Part shown: positions 4,201 to 62,015 of the stretch, piece by piece
How positions within the stretch are numbered: the first letter of the stretch is position 1
Layout: the number at the start of each line of letters is the position of its first letter
Assembly (NCBI GenBank): GCA_977030845.1
Contig: OZ365109.1
Coordinates: forward strand, 13,950,001 to 14,014,000
Direction: 5' to 3'
Source of the DNA: Fimbriosthenelais zetlandica
Taxonomy: Eukaryota
DNA length: 64,000 nucleotides
Translations under genes and position numbers: made by a program
The notes under the pieces: model-generated
Seen by the model: only the letters and a program-made list of their open reading frames with translations
Told to the model about the DNA's origin: nothing
Databases searched by the model: none

Positions 4201-7200
4201 TTTTGTCAACTATTTAAAACCATTATATAACCTCTTAAAATATATTCAGTTTGAATAAAACTGTCGAGTACCAACAAACAATTATCTCGCAATTTCCTTG
4301 GGGATTCACGGCATGTGTTTTTGTTTGGCTTAAACTGGGAAAAAGAGGAACTAAGGGAAAACTGATTAACCTTTGGCTCCTACGGTGACTTCAGAGAGTC
4401 ACTCCCGAAATACACTGGAAGTCATTGTCACTCTGTAACCTACACAGACTAAAGAAATCTTTCTTCCCCGCCCCTCCTTTATCCATTCTAGGTATAAAAA
4501 TATGTCTGCCAAAATTGAGTTACAATATATTTCCCTTTATCGTATTAAAGATAGGATCAAGGGATGATTATATCTTCCTCGCTTCGTGGTTGATGAATCG
4601 TACAGATCAATTGAGAATATTTTGTCTATTGGCTGTGGAGAATATATGAGTCTTGATAATAATCATGATCGATACCCTGACCAATAGCCATGTATTGCTG
4701 ATATCTCAATCCTCATTAATTTACCTTTCTTCCATACATTTACCTATTAATTACTCACTTGTTTTTTGGGCTGATGTGCCAAATATCTTAAATACCTCCA
4801 ACAAATATAGACTGACTTAATTTGCTTCTGGGTCCATCCCATGACAGAGCATAGATCTAGCCTCTTCAATCAATGAATTCCATTATATAAAGCCTGGAAC
4901 TCACTATTCCGATTCTCTATCCGACCCCATCCCATAGCTGTCCAAAACTATATTTCTATTCACACTAAATGCTTGTAATTTGAACTGTCCTTTACACCTA
5001 GGTAAGGCTAACCACTGACAAAATTCCAATGATTAGATGTCATTAGAAGTGGGGGTTCGGATGGCGATGGATTGGAGAATCGAAATTAGTGTGTTCCAGG
5101 CTTTCCGCTACTACATGCTCAGAGCAGAAACCACAGATAGATAACATGTTGACGAATGGTGATGGCCATAATTTATCACTTTGCTTTATCTCTGGTGCTA
5201 TTTTTCAGATTGTTGGGTTTTGTAAGACTCAGACATGGTCAGATTGGTCGGGCTGGAGCGAATGTTCGAGGACCTGCGATGGTGGAGCGTCATACCAACT
5301 CCGGAAGTGCCGCGGAAGTGGCCAGTGTCATGGAGATAGTATTCGTTACCGGACGTGCAACAGAAATGTAAGGACAAACTTCTCCCGTATGAGTTTAATG
5401 ACAGGGATTCACTAAGCAAACAGACAATCGAAAGCCAAACGTATTTTACTACTATTATAGTAGGCTACTATGTAGGGGATAAAACACGACAGTCCATGCT
5501 AATTTAAGTCTATGGGAAGAGTTTGGGCTGTAACGGGCCCCTGTTCCACCTATTTTTAAAAATATTGAAAAAAAACCCACTGAATTTGCTGGCATTTCTT
5601 TTCTATATTTTTACCTTTGAATATCCTGAAGCAATCCTTGTGGCCAAATCTACTGAAAGGTTTTCTTTTGCTTCACTTAAAAACTCGCATATTTGGCCCC
5701 AATAAACGTAGCAAAGTTCCATTTTGACACCACCCATACATGTCTTGAATACAAACACTAAAAACTTCTACAAGCATCACCCATGAAACCATGCAGCTGC
5801 ACCGAATGGTCCCTGCAAAGCTAGGGTGGAGCCATTCCTACCTATCAGGAATAGGCAGAAAAAAGTGGCAAGGTTGATGAATTGTTTCCCAAAGGAAGGT
5901 AACATTGAGGGTCATGGGCGTTTCTGTAGACAAGTGTTGGGGTCTTATCACAACGGGAGGGTATGATTTAGAACAAGCCTGATATCTATTGGTTCCTTAC
6001 CTACCCCATAGAGATACAGGAATCTTTACACCTAGTGGTCCTGCTGATGGAACTGATAACAGAAAAAAAATATTGGGGATCAGCAAGGAAATTTATAAGG
6101 CCTATATGGCACATGAACCGGTAGCCTTATATTTTGGCAACAATCATAATTTACACACAATTACAAATATCTATTCTTTAATTTACCGAAGGGTTTTTCC
6201 TATTTGTAGCTTTAATTAAACACCCTCGAAAGTTACTTTTGTATATCAATTTATGCAGCATTTACCTAGAATGATACAAAAACAAATTTTCGCGTTCCTT
6301 ACCCTGATTTGCCTCATACATTGTATGTATTTAATGTTTATTTTTTCTACCTTCCTCCTCCCACTCCAGCCATGCCCAGCTGGAAGCGGTGACTTCCGAG
6401 CTCAGCAATGTGCCGCCTACAATGATGTTCTCTATGAGGGGCGACTTTATGAGTGGGAACCTATCTCTGAGCCTCGAGATCCATGCTCGTTGAGGTGCAG
6501 GGCGGCAGGCCAGGCCTTCTCTGTCATGCTGGCACCCAAGGTTCTGGACGGGACGAGATGTGATGACAGCAGCATTGACATGTGTATCAACGGGCAGTGC
6601 AGGGTGGGTGCCATTTATGTAATCTATTGTCATTGAAATAACTCCAATTACGAGGGTGGCAAAATGAGAAAGTTATTTCTTTCTAAACTCGTACGTCTTT
6701 GCAGAAATCTAAGATGTTTTTTTCTGGAAATTTTATTTTTTCTCCAGGTCTAAAAGTCTGCACTTAGCCCAACTTAACCTAAACTCATTTTGAAAACCAG
6801 GTGAAAATATTCAGGTGTTTGAGTTAATATTGAAAATAACCTGTGACCATGAATATTGCATTGAGAAGAGTTCACCTTTTTGACAGAAAATTGTCTGAAG
6901 TAAGCATTTTCTCTAGTTTTTGCTGTCACTACTTTTATTTTTTACTTTTTATTAAAATTTTCAATATTTTTAATATTTCCTTGTGCTATACATCATTGGA
7001 ACGCTCGTGATTCTGTTCTATACGAACTGCAAACCCAAAGTAACTCAAATTAAATTTTTGCGACTTTCGACCCATTCAGTGAAAACATCACATATGTGAG
7101 AACTGAAGAATCTTCTGTAACATTTTACGATTCCCCTCAGACGGAATGTTCATTATTTTGTCTCCATCAGCTCTCACTCTTCCAGTCGAGATGATATATT

Positions 7201-16200: not shown

Positions 16201-19200
16201 CTCAAATTTCAATTTTTGTGAAATAGGAAAATAAGATTAGGATTATATTTCAGCTTCAGTTGAGAAGGCTCCTGATGGCAGTTCCATACCAGAACAAGTA
16301 GGAAGCAACCTACCCATACCGACTGCAGAAGACCAAGACATTTTAAACTTGTTAAACATGTTACTGGAAGGTAACACAACTGGTACCACCTCTCTGGCAG
16401 ATTTCAATGAAGATCCTCAGAGCGGTCCCGAAGAAAACAGTATTAGTTCCAAGGGTTTAGAAGAAGCGGAGAAAGGAAATTCAAACAGTGGTAGTATTAG
16501 AACTGTGGTGCATAGGAACAAAATAGAAATTATCCTAGAAAAGCCACCGACTGAAGAGGTGCATCGTATACCGGAGGCGGGTATAAATGATAATATGATG
16601 ATATATGGAGCTTCAAGGAGAAAAACTTCCTATCTGGATCCCCTGCAGGAGAGACAATCCTGGATAGATGGGAGTGGGGGCAAGGAGGATGGGGGGCTCA
16701 CTCCAGATGGCGATTTTGAGTCTAATGTGGCTGCACATACAGCACTGAGCGATGGTGTCTCTACCATACCCAAGTAAGTGTTAACTTACATCGTTTAAAC
16801 GACATTTTAATGAGGTAGTTCAGTGTTTTTTTCCTCGGTTGGATCCAAGGCTATGCATTTAAGTCACTAATTGAAATTTTCAATTGTCCTTTGATTTGTA
16901 CGTTTTAACTGTCAAATAACCAAGAGCGTTGGTATAGCGTCAAATGGAAATACCTAGTAAGTCACATTTTGAAAGAATAATGAGTTGAGGTCAAATGTTA
17001 CTTACTATGGTCGTTCCCAACTAAATATGCTGTTACATTTTGGAAAAGGTCCCACTGACTTCTGAATTTCGGACGACTGAAATCCTAGCAAGTCCGCTAC
17101 GAAGCCATTTTGAGTTGAACATTTAAACCTCTATTTTCAAAACTCGAAAAATGTGTCTTACTAGGTATTTCCATTGGGCGCTAGCAGCTCCTCTCCCCGC
17201 CACGCATCTAATTGCTCATTATAAAGCTGTGGACATTTCTCATATAATTCATATCTTTCCTTACAAAAGTTAATAGAAGTCTGTAATAAGCCCTCGCCCT
17301 CCATCCCTGTTAGATCATAACTCATCCCCCCAGCCTCAGGCTATTGTACAAAGCCATTATCTTCACCCCATAGATCCAATTAGACCCGAGCATCGTTTAT
17401 GCTTTACAGATTTGTAGCGTCCGCTTGGGGGCCTTGTAGTACCACATGTGGACCTGGTATCCGTACCCGTTTAGTGATGTGTAAAGTTTACCTCAAATTC
17501 TCCATGACGGTGCAGGATCTCCCCGATGACTCCTGCGAAGGTAAATTTTTGTCACACTTAGCATCACTCGTTTTTTTGGAACGAACATATTTATTCAGGA
17601 ACAAAGATTCGGAATACAAAGATTAAAAACCTGTTTTCAATCAGTGTCCTGACACAATAATATGACTAAAGTACTGTCTCCACATAGCGGACTTCAAAAA
17701 CAAGGGGAGGAAAGCTTCTAGGAAATTAAAAAATGAGACAATCATATGTGCACACAGATAGAGAAAACGTTTGGCTTGAAAGTAATCCAAACCATGGAAG
17801 ATTAGAGGCAGGATTCATTTCCGAAAATATATCCGTCCGCCGAATATGTCCATCCGCTATGGGGAGTAATTTATAGGCATTCCATATGAATTTAAAAGTT
17901 AATTGTTTTTGTTATTGTCATAAAATAGTCTACAAAAACATTGTATGCAAAATCTGGGATCATCCATAATTTCCAATCAATGTAACACAAAAAGGGGTTA
18001 ACTTTATTGAGTCATGGTATGAAAATAAAACGAATCTCGGGATGCATCTGAGGCCAGTTTCAATAGTAATGCTAAGTCTATGCCTAATATTCCTTTTGAA
18101 ACAGGCTCCTGGTGAAACGGATAGCCAAAACAGCCGTGCCTCAACTAATGTAATCAGCTCTGGGGAGATACTCATGTTTTGAGTATCCGTCAACCCAGAA
18201 ACAACCCACGTTTTACCTTTTCATTTTAATCATAATCTGATCTCATTTGTCAGGGGAGAAGCCAGTAGAAGTGGAGGCTTGTAGAATGAATGAATGTCCT
18301 GTCACATCCACTCAGGTCACTGTCGACGCCTACATCTGGCGTCATTATGGGCATGGACCCTGTAATGCTACCTGTCTTGGAGGTAAATATCTAAGCCTGG
18401 AATACACTAATCCGATTCTCGAATCTGTTGCAATCCGAACCTCCAATTCCAATGGCATCCAATAATTGAAATGTTGTCCGTGGTTAGCCTTAGGTATAAT
18501 TGACGGTTCAAATTATAACCGTTTGGTGTCGTTAGAAATATAGTTTCGGACAGCTATCGGATAGAGCCGGATGGAGAATCAGATTAGTGTGTTCCAGGCT
18601 TCCAGGCTTAAGGTATATGCAATATGTTGGTGTCTATATCAATGTCTGATGCAGTTCGATGAAAAGCCCTGCAAAGCCCAATGATTGAAGTTGCACTTTA
18701 TTTAAGCCTTACAAAAGCCAGTGTATATTAATTATGCTAATACGCGAACGGGAAGAAAATATTTTGCAGTTTTTCTCCTGAAAGTAGACATGTATCACTT
18801 ACATTAGCTTAGATTAAATAGACTGGATTTATCCGTTTTAAGAAATATAATCTAGAGGACTAATCTACAGGAAACTAGACTATATCTGTAAGTACTAAGT
18901 TCAATATGCACAAGACTAATCAGCGAAACCGAAATCAATCTGCCTGCTATAGATAGCATGAATCAATCTGTAGGTGTTGTGCAGTATCTGGAAGGGCTTC
19001 TTTTCAAATCTTTTCAAAAAAAATCAAGAGGACTGTCTATTAATTAACCTTGTAAATTATCATAGGTTATAAGGAGCGGGATCTCCGATGTATCAAAGTA
19101 CCCAGTGAGATGGAGGTTCATGTGAGCTTATGTGATGAAGCCATTAGACCAGATGGAGAGGCTGTGAAGTGCAATGACATCCCCTGCCCACCCAGGTCAG

Positions 19201-40100: not shown

Positions 40101-43100
40101 TCTTTGAAGAAAGACAAAAATAACCATGACGTAGTACATGATAGGAGCGCTACGACATTGACTCCTATTGAAGTCGTCGTCAACAATCTCACCGATGAAT
40201 CTAAAGTTGTGGAAATCAAGCGTCTCATGCCCCACTCACCAGATGGCGTGGTGAATGGTCTCCGAGTCCTGCCCTTGTCAGATCTGGAGGAAGAGGTTTT
40301 AGCATCTGTTGAAGGTAATTATTTATTCAATCATTTGATTTCAGTATAAATAATGCAATATTGAAGGCTTTATTTATATGCTGCCAAATCTGGTCGAGTG
40401 CTCAAGGCAAGAATGACAGCTAGAGTGAATGTAATATTGTTACTTGTCAAAACCTTGAGGAGGTCAGGTCCATGTCGTCAGGCTCATGTGGTTTAACTAT
40501 GTAGTTTTTAAAGAATCTGAATTTTGAAGGAATTTAAAGCAATATCCTATGCTCATTTCCAATTTCAAGGAAAAAGGGGGTACTTTTTTCCGATTGTCCC
40601 TGAAAATGTAAAAGGGTTATGTCAACATTACCCAGAAAAACTATAGCTATAGGCTACCCTTGGAGGTATGTGTAGGCCTACGTATACATGTACAGAAGGT
40701 TTTTATAAAGTCGGTCTAAACAAAAATACATGAATTCACATACATAAAAAAAGGGATACTTTTGAATGACAGGTGAAATCTCATTGTTTTCTAAGAAGTA
40801 GGATCCTTTTATGTAGGAAGAATAGGTAGGCCTACCACTGGATCTGTGACCTTGGTGCCACTTGCAGCTTCACAATGCTGGGAGTATCTTTGTAAAAAGG
40901 AGAGAGCAAATTTCCATAATGCCAATTTTTTGGGGACAATGTTATTTAACATCCTGTCATGTGAAAGGAGGTGATATCCATGTAGACTTATAGTAAGATG
41001 AGAAATATCTCAATGCGAGCGGAAGTCAGAACAGGTCCTCCAAATGGCTTGATTGACATTTCTATACTCAAGAGACTGAAAAACAAGGCCGGTATAATGT
41101 ATTTCACCTACCGTAAATGTAAGGTGTTAAATGAGTCTAGAAGTCGCAAAAATGGATTTTGTTGGTTAAACCGGGAATACACTAATCCGATTCTCCAATC
41201 CGTCGCCATCCGATACCCTATTTCTAATGACATCTAGAGATTGAAATTTTGTCAGTGGTTAGCCCTACCTAGGTATAAAGGATGTTCCAAATTACAAACA
41301 TTTAGTGTGAATAGAAATATAGTTTTGGAGAGCTATCGGATGGCGCCGGATAGAGAATCGGATTAGTGTATTCCTGGCTTTAGTTTCGTATAGAACTGAT
41401 CACGAGTGTTCCAATAATGTAGAGCACGTGGAGATATGGACAATATTTATATTTTTAATAATATTTCAAAAAATAAAATTAGTGACAGCGGTAACTAGAC
41501 AAAAGACCTATTTCAGATAATTTCCTATCTTACTGGAAAAAATCTTGAAGGGACAAGACGCACAAAGTTTAACTTTTATCAATTCCACTGAGGAAAATTG
41601 TAAAAACTGTTATAATTCTTGCGAAAATGCTAAGAGAAATAAGTGGCTTATGTACAACGCTTTCAAGCCTGTAGCGTCGAATGGGCCTGTACGATGTAGA
41701 ACCATTTAGTTAAAACGCATCACAAATTGTCTCTGGACTCGACCTTTCTCAGGTAAAAACGAGAGTCCCGCTATACATTGTATTTACCTTAATTATAATT
41801 GGTATTTACAAATCCTCGCAAAGTGCATTGACAACGTCTTTCTCGAATAATTATTTTGAACCAAGTACCGTCATCAAATAGCAAATCATCAATAGGCCTA
41901 TATAGTCACCTCGACTAATGCCGTTTTAATGTTCATTGTACCAGCTCCTAACAACTTTCTCACACCTTGTAGATTCATTAGGGCCTAATTATTGTCCAAA
42001 AGATAAAAATAATTTATAATAATTTTTCTTTGCAGCCTTCATTGAACAATAATTGAAAAGGTTCTTCAGCTTAACACTTTTAATTGTCATCCGATGGCCT
42101 TGAAGAGAATACAAAATTTAATTAATGATTCCTTTTTCAGTATGAAGTTTGGAGGTTGTATTTCCAATATTGCCAGTAGACTTTCTTACTGTTGCATTTC
42201 AGCAAGAAAATAGCATACGTGAATCATATTATGTCAGTAGGATATCTAAGGGAATACCTTCTAAAGTCCAATTAATGAATGGATTTGGGTGGCACCCGGA
42301 AAATTGTATTAGCAAATTCGTTCTGCTTCATGGCAAAGCAATTTCACCTTATTGTCTCCCGTAGATTGCCCCGTTGAGACGGACCTTTTAAGAACTATTG
42401 AGGGCGATAAAGGGGGACGTCAGCAAGAGGAGGATGATGGACTTCCTGTTGAGGAGGAACAGGAAGACGTCGTTATTGTGAACTTGATGAAGGGGGACAG
42501 AGGCCTGGGCCTTGGTCTGATTGATGGACTGGTAAGTAAATTTAGATCACTCTGCCCTCTCCTAGTTCATCCTTAATTAGCTTTAGTACATAATGATAGA
42601 TTCACCTTTGTAACTGGTCATTTTAATGAGGAATTATAACCCCCAACTTTTAAAGATTGGAAACAGTTTCATGTCGTAACTCCCTTGAGGAAAGTGAAAT
42701 TTACTGAACTGCCATGTTTTTTTAAACACTTCTATTTTCCATTGCTTTTCAATTGCATTGCGGGATATGGGAGAGTATCCATGGACTCTTGTTGTAATCC
42801 CAGTAGATACACACTTGCCATTATAATTTATTTGTAATTTCTCGCATGATTAGATACTTGATTAATTTTGCTTTCTCCTTTATAGTTTACACCCTTAAGA
42901 CGCCCCGGTATCTATGTCCGCACGTTGGTTCCGGGGGAACCTGCTGAACAAGATGGCCGCCTGCAAATAGGTGACCGGATCCTAGCAGTTAATGGTAAAA
43001 GCCTGGTTGGATCAGATTATCAAAGGTCAGTAGCTACTTTGCCCTGAAATCGTTATCTTTATAATCCTGGACCCCAGCAGTAATTTATAAAGATGTCAAG

Positions 43101-55100: not shown

Positions 55101-56333
55101 ACCAGGTTCATATGGGTAATATGAAAAATATACTTTTATTCAAAACAAGCGTTCATAATCATAGATACAGTTTGCTGTTTTAGGATGTTCATAAATACAG
55201 TATACTATATGCAGGGAATTCAGCTATATAACCGTGTAGGAAATATGTTCATTTTTCCCTAGTGCATGTTTTGTATAAATAGTATAATGTGCAGACCGTA
55301 ATTATAATAGGCCAAGCATGCGTCAAGGGGTAGTGGTAAGTTATGCAATGATCCAGCCTAGGTGTGCACCTCAGTGTCAGAGATCGTAGTAACATATTTA
55401 CATACGTCACACATTACTCGAAGGAATAGGACTAAGAGACTATATAAACTCATTAGCAGCCTTGTACTCCTATAGATTCCAAGATACCTATTTATAAGCA
55501 TTAGCAAGTGGATCATCTTTCTAATTTGGAAGGATGGATCTACTCATATATCTTACAGGGTATCTTATATGAAGCAATATATTCCATGCCTTGACTACCC
55601 AGTGAGATGCAACTGGATTGCCCCACAGTCATTCATATACCGTACCAATACTTTCATCGGCAACCCATTTTGCATGCGAGCAAGGAAATCGGGGGTATAT
55701 TTCAGCAGAAAGATGCCCTGATGAGGCAATATAGATGGACTTACCATAAGCTAATGTATACTATTCATGTGGAATCGATACTGTAATTTGGAGCACTCAA
55801 CAGAATGTAAGTCTCCTCATAAATTCATTCCACACATCATGAAGGGAGGAAATTTAACTATAGAGACTATTCTATATACATGTACTCTTCACTATGCTGA
55901 TTTGCATGACTGCTCAAGCGCGAGGGGTTCTCTGTAAATAGGTGTCCTCAGTTCGTTTCACAGTTTCCAGGAAGATATACATAGGTACGGTTACACTGGA
56001 AAAGTAAAAGAAACCTCGCACTTTGTTTCATATACAGAAAGGAGTTTATAATTTTACACAATAAGAATGTATCTGACGATACGCCCAATAGGGTACCCCA
56101 TGGACATGTTGTATTTTCACATCTAACCCTAATTATTACCCTCCTAATTTTTTTCTCTACATTCTAAATAGCACATCTTTCTATTGCAATACATGTGATA
56201 TAAGGCGCCCACACACTAATTCGATTCTCCATCCGGATCTATCCGATAGCTGTCCGTTTCAATATTTTTGTTAACACCCAATGCTATTTTGAGCACCGAG
56301 GTAACAACTGACGCAATTCCAGTCATTAGATGT

Positions 56334-57126
56334 CATTATAACCCAACACAGACTTAAAAATAACTTGTGGCTTTATTTTCAAGTCAGGGCGACATAGTAA
56401 ATTGAAAGGTTGAATTTGATAACTAGATCAAGTTATGAGATGCTTAGAAAATTACCAGATCATTGGAGATATGGATATGCGAAGGTTTTTGAAAAATGGT
56501 TATACAAAGAGAGAACGTTAACATGAACATGGTTTGTCTTTGAAGACTTGAATTAATTGAGCTAAGTAGCTAACATTAACAATGTCTGTTGCTGACTAAG
56601 TTGAGATAGTAAGTCTGTAGCGAATAAGACTTAAGAGTGAATTATGACAATGTTTTTGGTAAGGGCGGGAGGTGGGCCGAAAAAACGTGGCTTTCAGTGA
56701 GGAGAAAACTTGAAAAACAAAGAAGAAAGAAGGGGATTGGCTGAGAGATATCACGTGAGAGAGTAGTCTGCAGTGTCCAAATATAATGATCATGAATGTC
56801 ACATTAGTGACATCCAAAAACATTATAACCCAACACAGACTTAAAAATAACTTGTGGCTTTATTTTCAAGTCAGGGCGACATAGTAAATTGAAAGGTTGA
56901 ATTTGATAACTAGATCAAGTTATGAGATGCTTAGAAAATTACCAGATCATTGGAGATATGGATATGCGAAGGTTTTTGAAAAATGGTTATACAAAGAGAG
57001 AACGTTAACATGAACATGGTTTGTCTTTGAAGACTTGAATTAATTGAGCTAAGTAGCTAACATTAACAATGTCTGTTGCTGACTAAGTTGAGATAGTAAG
57101 TCTGTAGCGAATAAGACTTAAGAGTG
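56334..57126. repeat. 3' terminal split-direct-repeat block (B2-spacer-A2-B1 on the + strand)
   Basis: 56334-56639 equals 56821-57126, and 56676-56820 equals 59716-59860. Confidence 0.95.
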
Positions 57127-58130
57127 CCAACCGAAGGTTTAGGGATGAACCCAGATTGGCAAACTGCATGAAGTTGAGTAGCCACCAGGCTGCGGGCGCA
57201 GGTACAAAAGTACAGAGTCAGAAGACCACAGGCTATCAGCCTTGAGTTACCTAGGACATGAGCCCACCTGGCGGAGATGAATGAATTGGTCATTGGAGCA
57301 CTGTCGTCGAAGAGCGTCTGAGTCCATTTAAGGGTTACGGTACACAGTACATGAGTATGATGGCTGCTGAGTTGGCATGCGTACTTCTGTGTCCTGAAGT
57401 ACTGCACAATGCCAGAAAAGCATGAAGGACATGATGAGTTTGACGGCAGGCTGTTGAGTGGGAGAGTCATGGCATAGAGTGGGCATAGGAAATTCCATAT
57501 GGCAGGTAGAAAGATGCTCTAAGGGGCCTAGCCCCGCTAGAGCGTCTGAGCACACTAACCCGTGATGGAGATAGACCTATATCAGACATGGTGAGCTGGC
57601 GAGTAGAGAGGGCCAACCGAAGGTTTAGGGATGATTACCCAGATTGGCAAGAGCTGCATGAAGTTGAGGAGCCACCAGACTGCGGGCGCAGGTACAAAAG
57701 TACAGAGTCAGAAGACCACAGGCTATCAGCCTTGAGTTACCTAGGACATGAGCCCACCTGGCGGAGATGAATGAATTGGACATTGGAGCACTGTCGTCGA
57801 AGAGCGTCTGAGTCCATTTAAGGGTTACGGTACACAGTACACGAGTATGATGGCTGCTGAGTTGGCATGCGTACTTCTGTGTCCTGAAGTACTGCACAAT
57901 GCCAGAAAAGCATGAAGGCGTAACTGGGAGCTTTTTTGAGAAGGGGGATGACGATGTGAGATGTCAATACCCCTGAGGGCATTAGTGACAATAGGTGAAT
58001 CACAGACATCATATGAAAGCGCCGCCAGTTTGAGGTACGTCTTTCATGTGGCTAACAGTGTTCCTAATAGATGGGGCACCCCATAGAGTTCGAGAGATTT
58101 TTATTTGGGGATGATGATGTTCCAATAGAA
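57127..58130 (-). pseudogene. Frameshifted tyrosine recombinase remnant
   Basis: Joining frames gives GAPSIRNTVSHM/KTYLKLAALSYDVCDSPIVTNALRGIDISHRHPPSQK/KLPVTP, resembling the N-terminal region of DIRS/Ngaro YRs. Later SDIGLSPSRVSVLRRSSGA resembles a degenerate H-x-x-R box. Several stops and frameshifts. Confidence 0.7.
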
Positions 58131-58871
58131 GTTTCTAGGACGGTCAAACATTGCAGGTGTAATCTAATAGGTTTTAGTTATGACGATTACCTGCTAGATC
58201 CTAGGCAATGCCAATGGGTAGAAATAGTTCTACTTTGTTACACAGAGGCCAAACACGACAGGATGTCGTGTAAGTTGTGAGGCGGGATGGAGAGCGAAAG
58301 ACCATCATGTGGCCAGAGCACTCCAACCCCCACAGATCCCGATCCATTCCAGGTTAGATGGCAGGACAAAGCTAGCCCCTTGCATAGCCTATGTAATAGT
58401 CAGTGGCACAATCATGTGGAAGCAAAATGTCAGAATCTGTGTCAAATCTTATATCATTTTCACAACGAACGTGATCACCATAATATTAGTATCTGAATGA
58501 AAGGGATGTTCTTTTGTGGTACACTCACCGAGTACCGTAGTCAGTAGGCTAAGTTTTTCACGTAGCCAGGCGAACCCCCGAGAGGCGAGACCCGGGCAGG
58601 CCGCGACTGTGTTACAGCGGCCAAATCTCCAGAAAAACACACCAAGTCACATTGAACTGAAGGTGTGTCAACAGAAGGTTGGTTTAAATCATGCATCCAA
58701 GCGGTATTAACAATAACAGAGCCATAATCCAAGTGAGAGCTTCGATTTAAGCTTGGCAAAGTTGGTTTTTTGTTTATTCCGGAAGTAGCGCCATTTTGGA
58801 AAGAGGTAGGGGGTCTACTTCCGCTTCCGGGTCGTGGGCGAGATGTAAACAAAGCCACATGGTTCCCGGGC

Positions 58872-59632
58872 TTAATTGAAAAGGCCAGTTGAAATTGAAT
58901 TATGAAGGTGAATTAGGCCTAAGTGATTTCCCCTTACCTTTGGGCCTCGGAAGGTATTCATACTGTAACTTACTAACTTAGAATTTAATGCGAGTACTGG
59001 GAGATCCCTCCTCCCTTGTTGTTTAAGCTGGAACAGAGCCGTGGGACTGATCCTGAGGGCCATTCTTGGCATCCTTTGTCTTTGACATTTTCCGGGCATG
59101 TTTTTCGTATTATCATGATAGAGGGACAGAGCCAGGGACGAGTTTTCGGCCAATCATTCTGGTAGATAGAGGCAGCGAAAGATGGCTGTTCCCGGTTTAC
59201 GACCTTATCCTGGTCGAGCTGAGCTGATGACCCGTACACTACAGCTGGCGAGGGGGCCGTAGCGGCTGGCACTGAGTCTGAGCGGCTCATGGCGCCGCGG
59301 GGGCTGGACTCCACTTGAGGTCGGGAGCCGTCCTCGACCACGGAGTTTGACTGAGCACGTGTAGTCACTACTGTCATTATCCTGTTGAAAAGTTCCTCTA
59401 TATCGGCTTTCGATGCGAATGTTGAAGAGAGGGTTTTCCTTGTTGGGCGAGGTGTGAAGAAAACTTCTCCCTCGTCGTCTTCTTCCCCAGCAAGTTCCGG
59501 CTCCGACGTAAGGTTGTCGTCGCCATTTTGGTTAGCACCAGCACCAAGGGCTGTCCTTGATGTGCGCCCTGACGTTCTCCTCGTTGTTGCTGGGGAAGTT
59601 GGTGTTGCATTTCTCGACCCTTTCGGTGGCAT
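58872..59632 (-). pseudogene. ORF1/gag-like remnant of the YR retroelement
   Basis: 215-aa ORF starting 84 nt inside A1, with a low-complexity basic-then-acidic N-terminus and a probable frameshift into the 59153-58872 frame. Called from position only; no motif recognised. Confidence 0.45.
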
Positions 59633-59715
59633 CTTTGACTATCCAGCTCTTTCCGTAAGAGGTTTTAGAAGTGGTAGAGTTTATAGATGGTAATGGATAG
59701 GGCCAACAGAAATGA

Positions 59716-59860
59716 GCCGAAAAAACGTGGCTTTCAGTGAGGAGAAAACTTGAAAAACAAAGAAGAAAGAAGGGGATTGGCTGAGAGATATCACGTGAGA
59801 GAGTAGTCTGCAGTGTCCAAATATAATGATCATGAATGTCACATTAGTGACATCCAAAAA
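59716..59860 (-). repeat. 5' terminal repeat A1 with promoter-like motifs
   Basis: Exact copy of 56676-56820; contains TCACGTGA (E-box) and a CCAAT box on the minus strand. Confidence 0.9.
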
Positions 59861-62015
59861 CATTAGAAATGGGGAATCGGATAGCGACAATTCGATATAT
59901 CATCAGATGTCATTAGAAATGGGGAATCGGATGGCGACGTATTGGAGAATCGGACCAATTCGCCCCCGCCTTAAGTCTCTTTTGCTTGCATCAGCCAAGG
60001 CAAAGCTGGATGGCATTGAGATATACATGTATCAATATCAATGCCATCTAAGGTATTACCTTAGCAAAGGTCTTATGATTATGGTCTTTGTCCGTGTCAT
60101 CTAAACATCGAACACTGTCTGTCTGAGTCCTGTCAACCTTAATTAAGCGGGAGACTCCTCATCCTTTGCCATCATTTTGCCACAGATGAGAAGCGATAAT
60201 ATCTATGTTGTAGCCATATTCCCCGATCCAAACTCGCCAGACACTATATAGCACAAGGTGATGGATAACCATGTTCCCGCCTTTTAATGGATCTTTTATA
60301 GACACCTTTAAATAGACGATATTCTGGGTTACGTGTAGTGGCCTGGACGATGCGTTGGGCTGACACGGTAAGGAACAAGCTAAGGAGCTTAACCTCCAGC
60401 GTCCCTAATCAATCAGCTATTCAATGTTTTATCAGAATGTACGGAGGAACTATATTTCCAGGGAAAAGTCTCTTACAGAGGGATAATTTCTTTAGTGCTG
60501 ACAAGAGGAAATAAATCATTCAGAGAAAGGCGAAGAAGTGGATGGTAGAAATGAGGAGGGGATGGTAGTCAAAAGCTGCATGCCCTATAATTCTTAAATA
60601 CCAGGGGCCTATTCTTAAGTAAGGTGCACTAACTTAGCTACTGAGCAGTCCATCCTTTCTCCACCATCGCCCCGAAGCTTCCTCGGCAACCTTTCTGCAA
60701 GGAAAATTTAAGATCGGAACATTCCAGATGAACATACACCATTCAGAAAACGTCTTTTTGCATGTGGTTTAATTATCATAAACTAGTATTATCAGAGTCA
60801 TTTCACCTCAATTAATCCAACATTGGTAACAGCATGACCCCCTCAAAAATAAAATGATATTTCACATACATGTGCCCTGACATGTATCATGAAGCTTCGC
60901 AAAGGTTCAGCTCAATATGACCAATAGTTGTAAAGATAATATCACTCTTTACCCCGCTTGGGATGTGTCTGTCTCATATTTTTTGAGTATGTCACCATGC
61001 AGGTTGTCACTTTTTTGGGGACTTGCCTGATGAGTGCACAGCACATTATTGTGAACACTTGCATTAGTATAATGGACAGGTTACAGGGAAATTCTTTCAT
61101 ACTGACAAGGAAGAGCCAGCTGAGTTCCAAGAAAGGATGCATGTGGCGGGGGGCCTGTGTCAAAAGGAATATTAGCAATGATAAGTCTATGGCTAATATT
61201 TGTTTTGAAACAGGCCCCAGAAAGTCCCTCTTTGTCACTTAATACGGTCATGTATTCGAGTTTGAGTGAGTCAAAATCCTTCATGTAGTAGATGTGAACT
61301 TTTTAGAAAATCATTTGCGAGGAAATGTCAAGGTAACTGTAACAAAATATTTGTGTCTGTGTATATCGAGCGGTGATGCTGACCATTTTAACGATGACCT
61401 CCCCCCCCCCCCTCCCCGCAAACAGTGGCAGTGTCACACAATTCAATTGAACACTCGACCCCCAACACCCCAGCAAGTGACATCCTTTATTGACTGCTCC
61501 TTTCATGAACTCATGATCTAAATGATTTCCATGAGAGTGTCAGAACATACTGGTGACAAGGCCTGCTTTAATCGTTTCCAGATAAAGTATAAGGTCTAAA
61601 CATTGTACTGGCTGAATTCCCAGTCAAAAGAACCTTCCGCTCCTTCTCCATCTTTCTATCCCAGCTTTGCTCCGGACTTTTGGGCGATCAATCCTTTATT
61701 ATCCCAAATCTGAGAAGGGAAGGAAAAAGCCCCCATCTGCATCTGAGAGCAGACGGAGGAATCCTCTATTTCCATCTAAAGTATATAGCGCTCATTTAGA
61801 GTCTGTTGCTTCCAGTCGGGTGATCTGAGAGGATTACTGACCACAACTGTACTGCCTGGATCGACGGGAAATATGCCTTTATAGGTATAATCTGAAACAG
61901 CTGCACAGCTTTATTTATAAGGAGTCGCTAAATGTAACGTATCTAGACCCACCACACAATACGTTATACCTTTCCATAGGAATCCTTCAGCATAAGGAGA
62001 TAGCAGGTGGGGATC

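What the first reader, a model, noticed from the sequence alone, without database searches (positions are those of the whole stretch)
56334..59865. Young, non-autonomous split-direct-repeat (Ngaro/PAT-type) tyrosine-recombinase retroelement
The A1-ORFs-B1-A2-B2 layout is the hallmark of SDR-type YR retrotransposons. Both repeat pairs (145 and 306 bp) show no differences by eye, as expected if they were regenerated by recent reverse transcription. The interior is old and broken: the YR is frameshifted, there is no recognisable RT or RNase H, and an internal duplication has already diverged. The simplest reading is a coding-dead 3.5-kb derivative still being copied in trans by an autonomous partner, a YR-class counterpart of LARD/TRIM elements. 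Such derivatives are, to my knowledge, sparsely documented in invertebrates.
Basis: partly seen in the sequence, partly recalled or inferred. Interest (0 to 1): 0.78.

Follow-up and report, generated by a model that had tools for sequence, protein, structure and literature searches.

The report
Pol-less split-direct-repeat retroelement keeping ORF1
This is a recently inserted 3.5-kb jumping gene with the repeat layout of tyrosine-recombinase retrotransposons; it has no copying or insertion enzyme of its own, only one small intact gene, so it must borrow those enzymes, which makes it an uncommon but already known kind of element.

Summary
The repeat layout is real. On the minus strand the element reads A1 (145 nt), ORF1, non-coding interior, B1 (306 nt), A2, a 36-nt spacer, B2. 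A1 equals A2 and B1 equals B2 exactly.

- **Copies:** two more full copies lie on other chromosomes with unrelated flanks, plus truncated and solo A-spacer-B relics. A sister family of at least four full copies has the same layout.
- **Repeat regeneration:** every difference between copies inside A or B appears in both members of the pair, so each pair seems to be remade from one template per cycle.
- **Insertion:** empty-site paralogs show a precise insertion with no target duplication, at a TAATG shared with the end of B. Across 12 sites the 5' flank resembles the B end.
- **Not confirmed:** no interior piece on either strand matches a recombinase, RT or RNase H. The RT in one copy is a nested LINE.
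- **Not coding-dead:** ORF1 (215 aa) is intact in all three copies and conserved with the sister family, but has no relatives elsewhere.
- **Partner:** no autonomous element with the same termini exists in the assembly.

The verdict is a genuine, young, non-autonomous SDR element, like TOC1 or SIRE. Superfamily and helper are undetermined. The scan had already noted a similar gag-keeping element elsewhere in this genome.

The parts
59716..59860 (-). A1, the 5' terminal repeat (145 nt). It starts TTTTTGGATG.
   Evidence: 100% identical to A2. The same start is seen in all copies and solos.
59861..59865 (-). TAATG shared by the target site and the end of B. This is the ambiguous crossover core, so the element boundary may lie anywhere within these 5 nt.
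   Evidence: Empty-site paralogs read ...TTTCTAATG|ACATCT... without interruption. B ends in TAATG.
59834..59855 (-). Hairpin or dyad GGATGTCAC-N4-GTGACATTC, 5 nt inside A1. The same motif lies in A2 at 56794-56815.
   Evidence: It is the core of the predicted fold (z = -2.8 for the whole 211-nt stretch folded). It is conserved in the sister family with one compensatory G-C to U-A change.
58985..59632 (-). ORF1, 215 aa and intact. It holds the gag position but is an orphan protein, mostly disordered with one conserved helix (residues 75-96).
   Evidence: Open in all 3 copies. 37% identical to the sister-family ORF1. No Pfam hit, and no hit in the 5.8-billion or 1.84-billion protein libraries. 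AlphaFold2 mean pLDDT is 43.
57127..58984 (-). Non-coding interior with no recognisable RT, RNase H or YR.
   Evidence: No Pfam hit for any stop-free piece on either strand. The two long interior pieces searched as proteins match only the family's own copies.
57654..57918 (-). Internal duplication, upstream member.
   Evidence: 265 nt, 98% identical to 57164-57428.
57164..57428 (-). Internal duplication, downstream member, ending about 40 nt upstream of B1. In the two other copies its first 106 nt are missing.
56821..57126 (-). B1 (306 nt). It contains AATAAA at 56864-56859 followed by a GT-rich tract, and ends GGGTTATAATG.
   Evidence: 100% identical to B2. The AATAAA block is conserved in the sister family.
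56676..56820 (-). A2, the internal copy of A. The B1|A2 junction lies at 56821/56820.
56640..56675 (-). A2-B2 spacer (36 nt). The 24-nt motif spanning the A2/spacer boundary is 22 of 24 identical with the sister family. The spacer holds CCAAAAACATT (56659-56649), the reverse complement of the junction AATG|TTTTTGG.
56334..56639 (-). B2, the 3' terminal repeat. AATAAA lies at 56377-56372.
56211..56333 (.). 3' flank. This is half of an older host repeat of about 210 nt into which the element inserted.
   Evidence: Paralogs at window positions about 4.9-5.1 kb, 18.4-18.6 kb and 41.2-41.4 kb and in L037 span the insertion point.
59866..59954 (.). 5' flank, the other half of the same host repeat.

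Best explanation
This is a young, low-copy, non-autonomous retroelement with the split-direct-repeat (A1-ORF-B1-A2-B2) architecture of the DIRS order, that is Ngaro, PAT or VIPER type. It carries only a small orphan ORF1 in the gag position, plus conserved cis-acting modules. Those modules are a hairpin or dyad just inside A, an AATAAA polyadenylation block near the end of B, the B|A junction, and a pyrimidine-rich A2-B2 spacer. Inferred mechanism: the element is transcribed from A1 into B2. It is reverse-transcribed by an RT supplied in trans, so that each of the A and B pairs is rebuilt from one template. The B-end/A-start junction is then recombined by a trans-supplied tyrosine recombinase into a genomic site that shares a short TAAT-like core. 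This produces no target-site duplication. Later recombination between the direct repeats gives the A-spacer-B solos and the A-interior-B forms. What is shown: the layout, the multiple dispersed copies, the concerted repeat variants, the precise TSD-less insertion with flank-to-B-end similarity, the absence of pol, and the intact conserved ORF1. What is inferred: the RNA intermediate, the YR step, and the existence of a helper.
For: - Layout and exact repeat identity.
- Three full copies sit on two chromosomes with unrelated flanks and 97.9-98.7% identity. There is also one truncated copy and several solo A-spacer-B relics.
- A sister family (73-78% identity in A and B) has the same layout, including a spacer of about 34 nt.
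- All four between-copy differences found inside SDRs occur in both members of the pair of that copy. These are A position 102 and B position 228 in family 1, and an indel plus a substitution in the B of L038 in family 2. No within-copy difference was found in 7 copies.
- The 3' block B1-A2-spacer-B2 differs 0.1-0.4% between copies, against 1.4-2.7% in the interior (Fisher p down to 7e-7).
- Empty-site paralogs show an exact insertion without TSD or deletion.
- In 12 insertion sites the last 8 nt of the 5' flank match the B end at 4.4 of 8, against 2.3 of 8 for background (P < 1e-5). Position -5 is T in 10 of 12 and position -4 is A in 11 of 12. This is the behaviour described for DIRS1-like elements, which recombine at a 3-bp junction identical to the target and make no TSD (PMC3266345).
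- The genome holds at least 99 PF00589 recombinase loci as possible helpers.
- Precedents: SIRE/VIPER has an exclusive stretch of about 30 bp between A2 and B2 (PMC6681497). Solo AB repeats are known for Ngaro (PMC8547959). TOC1 is a non-autonomous DIRS element (PMC9940879).
Against: - No trace of YR, RT or RNase H links the element to the DIRS order by homology.
- No autonomous element shares its junction, termini or ORF1.
- ORF1 has no homolog outside this genome and is not recognisably Gag.
- No RNA or read data could be obtained; no sequencing run was listed.
- The 11-nt spacer complement of the junction is only 8 of 11 in the sister family.
Confidence: 0.7

Rival explanations
1. One reading: a recent deletion derivative of an autonomous Ngaro or PAT element. 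It would still carry a frameshifted YR and be copied by a partner that has the same SDRs.
For: The SDR layout and the young repeats fit. Defective Ngaro copies with partial pol were noted elsewhere in this genome by the scan (s1-196139, unchecked).
Against: No YR, RT or RH signal appears in any frame. Interior pieces match nothing outside the family. The B|A junction and ORF1 occur only in pol-less copies. A sister family that is equally pol-less and whose ORF1 has diverged to 37% identity implies a long pol-less history.
Confidence: 0.07
2. A DNA-level mobile element moved directly by a tyrosine recombinase (Crypton-like, as a circle or by cut-and-paste) without reverse transcription. The A-B-A-B pattern would be a fixed partial tandem duplication of its ends.
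For: Insertion is TSD-less with core microhomology. There is no RT remnant and no retro-type partner. Cryptons are present in the genome according to a scan note (s1-219921, unchecked).
Against: Concerted variants in both members of each repeat pair in 7 copies need a per-cycle regeneration step. An AATAAA plus GT-rich block is conserved just upstream of the B end, where the SDR model expects the RNA 3' end. The layout is the diagnostic one of SDR retroelements (PMC4157794, PMC9210276).
Confidence: 0.12
3. Another kind of retroelement with pseudo-LTRs created by partial tandem insertion (Penelope-like), or an LTR-derived TRIM or LARD.
For: It has direct repeats, lacks pol and has an internal non-coding filler.
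Against: There is no TSD. The ends are not TG...CA, no PBS or PPT sits in the LTR positions, and the repeat order is not LTR-interior-LTR. No hammerhead or any other Rfam family was found, and no tRNA-like sequence.
Confidence: 0.05
4. It is not a mobile element at all, but a segmental duplication or an assembly artefact.
For: No read data could be laid on the locus.
Against: Identical boundaries with unrelated flanks occur at three loci on two chromosomes, and at least 4 loci of a sister family. The insertion point is exact relative to paralogous empty sites.
Confidence: 0.02

Closest known systems
Ngaro and PAT-like elements (DIRS order, split direct repeats)
   Same: The layout is A1-[ORF]-B1A2B2 with A1 equal to A2 and B1 equal to B2. 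An ORF sits in the gag position directly after A1. Insertion leaves no TSD. Solo A-B relics occur, as described for Cafeteria Ngaro (PMC8547959).
   Different: It has no RT/RNase H, no YR and no methyltransferase, so it cannot be placed in either superfamily. It is 3.5 kb rather than about 4-7 kb. There is a 36-nt spacer between A2 and B2.
SIRE / VIPER of Trypanosoma cruzi
   Same: VIPER has SDRs, and SIRE corresponds to A2 plus an exclusive region of about 30 bp plus B2 (PMC6681497). That is the same A-spacer-B unit seen here, both at the 3' end and as solos.
   Different: SIRE has no interior and no ORF. VIPER, its autonomous relative with the same repeats, is known, whereas no such relative was found here. 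The host is a kinetoplastid, not an animal.
TOC1 of Chlamydomonas (non-autonomous DIRS/PAT-type element)
   Same: It is a non-autonomous member of the DIRS order that was mobile in recent history (PMC9940879).
   Different: The host is an alga, and there is no sequence relation. I did not check TOC1's coding content here, so the comparison rests on the paper's wording only.
TR-GAG, LARD and TRIM (non-autonomous LTR retrotransposons)
   Same: These are pol-less elements that keep their terminal repeats and, in TR-GAG, only a gag-like ORF, and that depend on trans-acting enzymes. This comparison rests on my own knowledge and was not checked in a paper here.
   Different: Those elements have true LTRs, integrase-made TSDs, and a PBS and PPT. 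This element has split direct repeats and no TSD.
DIRS1-like elements
   Same: Integration is by recombination between a short junction sequence (usually AAT/ATT) and an identical genomic sequence, without TSD (PMC3266345). An ICR-like 11-nt complement of the junction is present in the spacer.
   Different: DIRS1-like elements have inverted terminal repeats plus ICRs, not direct repeats. The complement here is short and poorly conserved in the sister family (8 of 11).

Membership tests
SDR-type YR retrotransposons (Ngaro / PAT / VIPER, DIRS order) | Split direct repeats A1 ... B1 A2 B2, with A1 equal to A2 and B1 equal to B2 | tested here: met
   A is 145 nt and B is 306 nt, each pair 100% identical, in the right order on the minus strand. 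The same holds in 2 other copies and in 4 copies of a sister family.
SDR-type YR retrotransposons (Ngaro / PAT / VIPER, DIRS order) | Encodes a tyrosine recombinase | tested here: not met
   No PF00589 hit or any other Pfam hit in any stop-free piece, on either strand. None of the genome's PF00589 hits lies in or near a copy.
SDR-type YR retrotransposons (Ngaro / PAT / VIPER, DIRS order) | Encodes a Gypsy-related RT / RNase H | tested here: not met
   None is present in the window copy. The RVT_1 ORF in the C1 61.36-Mb copy belongs to a nested 5'-truncated LINE, because its homologs carry an AP endonuclease domain plus RVT_1.
SDR-type YR retrotransposons (Ngaro / PAT / VIPER, DIRS order) | Integration without target-site duplication, at a short sequence shared with the element junction | tested here: met
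   Empty-site paralogs are contiguous across the insertion point, and TAATG is shared. In 12 sites there is no TSD and the 5' flank resembles the B end.
Non-autonomous derivative of a resident autonomous element | Shares termini or cis sequences with an autonomous partner in the same genome | tested here: not met
   The 100-nt junction query, the 20-nt junction pattern and the ORF1 profile all hit only pol-less copies. Two extra hits of the spacer motif, at C1:38828678 and C10:11106607, could not be fetched.
Ngaro versus PAT superfamily | Absence (Ngaro) or presence (PAT) of the methyltransferase domain, and RT/YR phylogeny | not testable with these tools
   No pol sequence is left to classify.
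Retroelement (an RNA intermediate) | Repeat pairs regenerated in each cycle, a transcript with a polyA signal, and cDNA intermediates | tested here: inconclusive
   Concerted variants (4 of 4) and a conserved AATAAA block support it. No RNA or read data were available.
Gag (ORF1 of DIRS-order elements) | Homology or a zinc knuckle or coiled coil typical of Gag-like ORF1 | tested here: not met
   No Pfam hit, no homolog in either library and no Atlas hit. There is no CCHC motif. AlphaFold2 predicts one helix and otherwise disorder. Only the position is gag-like.

The most novel reading that the evidence does not exclude
These elements are not decayed copies of an autonomous Ngaro. They would be an old, self-perpetuating clade of ORF1-only split-direct-repeat retroelements, with at least 2-3 families in which ORF1 has diverged to 37% identity. 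The clade would keep its own conserved cis-module (junction hairpin, polyA block, spacer) and hijack the RT and YR of helpers whose termini are unrelated. That would make it a DIRS-order counterpart of TR-GAG or SINE-like long-lived parasites.
Probability: 0.3. Interest if true: 0.6.

Novelty: new member of a known kind. Interest (0 to 1): 0.38.

Why it matters
Replication of split-direct-repeat elements is known mostly from models. This family is small, young and free of pol, and it has a sister family. Together they expose which sequences are kept when everything dispensable is lost:

- the B|A junction;
- a dyad or hairpin 5 nt inside A, with a compensatory change between the families;
- an AATAAA block about 44 nt before the B end;
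- a 24-nt pyrimidine-rich spacer motif;
- one small ORF.

The concerted variants show that both repeat pairs are reset in each cycle. The 12 insertion sites give a target rule of a TAWW-like core matching the B end, with no TSD. These are testable hypotheses about cis requirements and about how a YR retroelement chooses its targets. Otherwise it is an ordinary low-copy transposon with no evident effect on a host gene.

Tried and rejected
- **RT in the C1 61.36-Mb copy.** I took it at first for the missing pol. It is a nested 5'-truncated LINE, because its homologs carry an AP endonuclease domain plus RVT_1.
- **The 82%-identical relative at C25:23.09 Mb.** It is interrupted by 5.8-kb and 12.8-kb inserts. 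The only RT there lies on the opposite strand, and there is no YR. It is not a partner.
- **ORFs upstream of a B fragment in L044.** These are Gypsy RNase H and integrase, and are unrelated.
- **ORF1 identity.** Pfam, the word search, the full HMM search of 1.84 billion representatives and the ESM Atlas were all blank. The AlphaFold2 model was too poor for a fold search.
- **dN/dS of ORF1 within families.** It is about 1 or higher, based on 1-22 changes, so it is uninformative. Between the families it is 0.38, with dS saturated.
- **Rfam and tRNA scans of the element.** Nothing was found. The bacterial promoter and terminator scan is irrelevant here.
- **Sequencing runs.** None was listed. Structure by reads, expression and polymorphism remain untested.
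- **Fetching recombinase loci to compare their termini.** I did not try other routes to those letters and used table-only searches afterwards.
- **Period coincidence.** The 490-nt spacing of the internal duplication and the 487-nt B1-B2 spacing suggested a link, but I found no sequence evidence for one.


Full report
**Observation**

The repeat finder and exact comparisons confirm two perfect direct-repeat pairs.
- B is 306 nt, at 56334-56639 and 56821-57126.
- A is 145 nt, at 56676-56820 and 59716-59860.
- There is also a 265-nt internal duplication at 98% identity (57164-57428 and 57654-57918).

Read on the minus strand, the order is A1, ORF1 (59632-58985), interior, B1, A2, a 36-nt spacer, and B2. 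This is the split-direct-repeat (SDR) formula given for Ngaro, PAT and VIPER elements (PMC4157794, PMC9210276, PMC6681497). The spacer has a precedent: SIRE of T. cruzi equals A2 plus an 'exclusive' stretch of about 30 bp plus B2 of VIPER (PMC6681497).

**Copies**

A DNA search of the window's own 447-Mb assembly and local alignments give two further full copies.
- One is at C25:12.12 Mb and is 3388 nt long.
- The other is at C1:61.36 Mb and is 5401 nt long, because it holds a 1.88-kb insert.

Both have the same ends as the window copy but unrelated flanks. They are 97.9-98.7% identical to the window copy and to each other.

Other relatives are as follows.
- A 5'-truncated copy on C21 ends after a single B.
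- Diverged A-spacer-B solos lie on C34 and C38, and further fragments were also seen.
- A sister family is 73-78% identical in A and B and unalignable in the interior. It has at least four full copies of about 3.5 kb, one of them 6 kb with an insert. Its layout is the same, including a spacer of about 34 nt.

The structure is therefore a transposing unit. It is neither an assembly artefact nor a segmental duplication.

**Coding content**

The 1.88-kb insert of the C1 61.36-Mb copy encodes a 568-aa RVT_1 protein. Its homologs are AP-endonuclease plus RT proteins, which means LINEs, and the insert ends in an A-rich tail. It is a nested LINE, not the element's pol.

In the window copy no stop-free piece of the interior, on either strand, hits any Pfam family (E up to 1, up to 10). 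The longer pieces match nothing in the genome beyond the family's own copies. PF00589 finds at least 99 recombinase loci elsewhere in the genome, so the model is sensitive enough in this genome.

ORF1, by contrast, is open in all three copies at 215, 215 and 210 aa. It aligns from its start codon with the 153-aa ORF1 of the sister family at 36-38% identity. The conserved core is LSSTF..KAD.E.LF.RI, and between-family dN/dS is about 0.38, with dS saturated.

ORF1 is an orphan.
- The word search found no hit.
- A full HMM search of 1.84 billion representatives found no hit.
- The ESM Atlas gave no usable hit.
- AlphaFold2 predicts one helix (residues 75-96) and otherwise disorder, with mean pLDDT 43.

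It is 'gag-like' by position only. The element is pol-less, but it is not coding-dead.

**Evidence for a replicative, recombinase-type life cycle**

1. *Concerted repeat variants.* Within each of seven copies (three of family 1, four of family 2), A1 equals A2 and B1 equals B2 exactly. The copies do differ from one another inside A or B at four points. These are A position 102 and B position 228 in family 1, and an indel plus a substitution in the B of one family-2 copy. In every case the variant is present in both members of the pair. Each pair is therefore rebuilt from one template per cycle, as LTRs are. Gene conversion is the less likely alternative.
2. *Conserved 3' block.* The B1-A2-spacer-B2 block differs 0.1-0.4% between copies, whereas the interior differs 1.4-2.7% (Fisher p = 0.02, 7e-7 and 1e-6). 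The insertions are young, because no differences are seen in the 451 nt of paired repeats of any copy. The interior differences therefore largely predate insertion. Either the terminal block is under purifying selection in the active lineage, or it is exchanged among copies.
3. *Precise insertion.* The flanks of the window copy belong to an older host repeat of about 210 nt. Four paralogs of that repeat read straight across the insertion point as ...TTTCTAATG|ACATCT.... The insertion is exact, with no duplication and no deletion, and TAATG is shared between the target and the end of B.
4. *Target rule.* Across 12 independent insertion sites of both families and the solos, no TSD is seen. The last 8 nt of the 5' flank match the B end (TTATAATG) at 4.4 of 8, against 2.3 of 8 for random sites (P < 1e-5). 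Position -5 is T in 10 of 12 and position -4 is A in 11 of 12. The 3' flank does not resemble the start of A. This matches what is described for DIRS1-like elements: recombination between a 3-bp junction, mostly AAT/ATT, and an identical genomic sequence, without TSD (PMC3266345).

**Conserved cis modules**

These come from the alignment of the two families.
- An AATAAA block followed by a GT-rich tract lies 44 nt before the end of B. This suggests that the RNA ends just short of the B2 terminus, as the SDR model needs.
- The junction GTTGGGTTATAATGTT is identical in both families.
- A 9-bp dyad or hairpin lies 5 nt inside A. It has one compensatory G-C to U-A change between the families. It could be an RNA or cDNA structure, or a symmetric protein-binding site.
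- A 24-nt motif spanning the A2/spacer boundary (GCCCACCTCCCRCCCTWACCAAAA) is 22 of 24 identical between the families. It has only 13 hits in the genome.

The spacer of family 1 also contains the exact 11-nt reverse complement of the junction, AATG|TTTTTGG. In family 2 only 8 of 11 positions match, so I treat it as unproven.

**The helper**

A 100-nt query across B1|A2 and a 20-nt junction pattern allowing two mismatches hit only the 3 + 4 pol-less copies, plus chance-level hits. ORF1 searched as a single sequence and as a profile hits about 14 loci, none of them near a scored recombinase hit. No autonomous element with these termini or this ORF1 is present in the assembly.

The helper must therefore either differ in its termini, or be absent from this assembly, or be extinct. 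No sequencing run was listed for the locus, so expression, polymorphism and read-level structure remain untested.

**Comparison and verdict**

The element works like an SDR retrotransposon of the DIRS order. It meets the structural and integration criteria and fails the coding criteria. It can therefore be filed only as a non-autonomous SDR element of undetermined superfamily.

Non-autonomous relatives are known, namely TOC1 (PMC9940879) and SIRE (PMC6681497). Solo AB repeats are also known (PMC8547959). The scan had already noted a gag-keeping non-autonomous Ngaro-type element and another A1-X-B1-A2-B2 element elsewhere in this genome (s1-214061, s1-183034; I did not check either).

It is a new member of a known kind. 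The more interesting reading that the evidence does not exclude is an old, diversified clade of ORF1-only SDR elements that uses unrelated helpers.

Noticed in passing
L031:4360-6231 (G000:C1:61.36 Mb copy): A nested 5'-truncated LINE lies in the same orientation as the element. It has an intact 568-aa RT ORF (RVT_1). The best homologs are 66% identical and carry an AP endonuclease domain. The insert ends in an (AATA)n-like tail.
   Followed up: partly
window 56211-56333 + 59866-59954; paralogs at window ~4900-5110, ~18380-18590, ~41160-41370; L037:8496-8681: The element sits inside a dispersed host repeat of about 210 nt (SINE- or MITE-like). Directly upstream of the insertion site, about 50 nt of that repeat are duplicated in tandem.
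   Followed up: partly
L039:7607-8716, L040, L037, L038, L048: The sister family carries an internal tandem array of about 15 units of 72 nt. One copy (L039:4614-6797) has an extra 2.2-kb non-coding insert.
   Followed up: no
L048 (G000:C23:1.80 Mb) and L033 (G000:C21:25.997 Mb): These copies end after a single B and have no A2-spacer-B2. That is the form expected from B1 x B2 recombination, or from a one-unit intermediate.
   Followed up: partly
G000:C39:4703220-4703508 and G000:C38:178133-178421; L046 and L047 on C21: Element fragments sit in pairs of loci with identical match patterns, and L046 and L047 also share an identical 5' flank. These are either segmental duplications or uncollapsed haplotigs.
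   Followed up: no
G000:C1:38828678-38828701, G000:C10:11106607-11106630: Two extra hits of the 24-nt spacer motif, one exact and one with a single mismatch, lie outside all known copies. They may mark a further related family. They were not fetched.
   Followed up: no
G000:C30:2351462-2351923, G000:C29:14372896-14373207, G000:C15:440913-441224: Three further ORF1-profile hits (E from 5e-54 to 6e-33) do not belong to either family studied here.
   Followed up: no
window 57164-57918 versus 56334-57126: The internal duplication has a period of 490 nt, almost the same as the 487-nt B1-B2 period. This may be a coincidence, or a trace of an earlier template jump. In the two other copies the downstream member lacks its first 106 nt.
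   Followed up: partly
L044:7875-10000 (G000:C39:4.71 Mb): A Gypsy-type RNase H and integrase (rve, Integrase_H2C2) lie next to a 745-aa ORF that has no Pfam hit.
   Followed up: no
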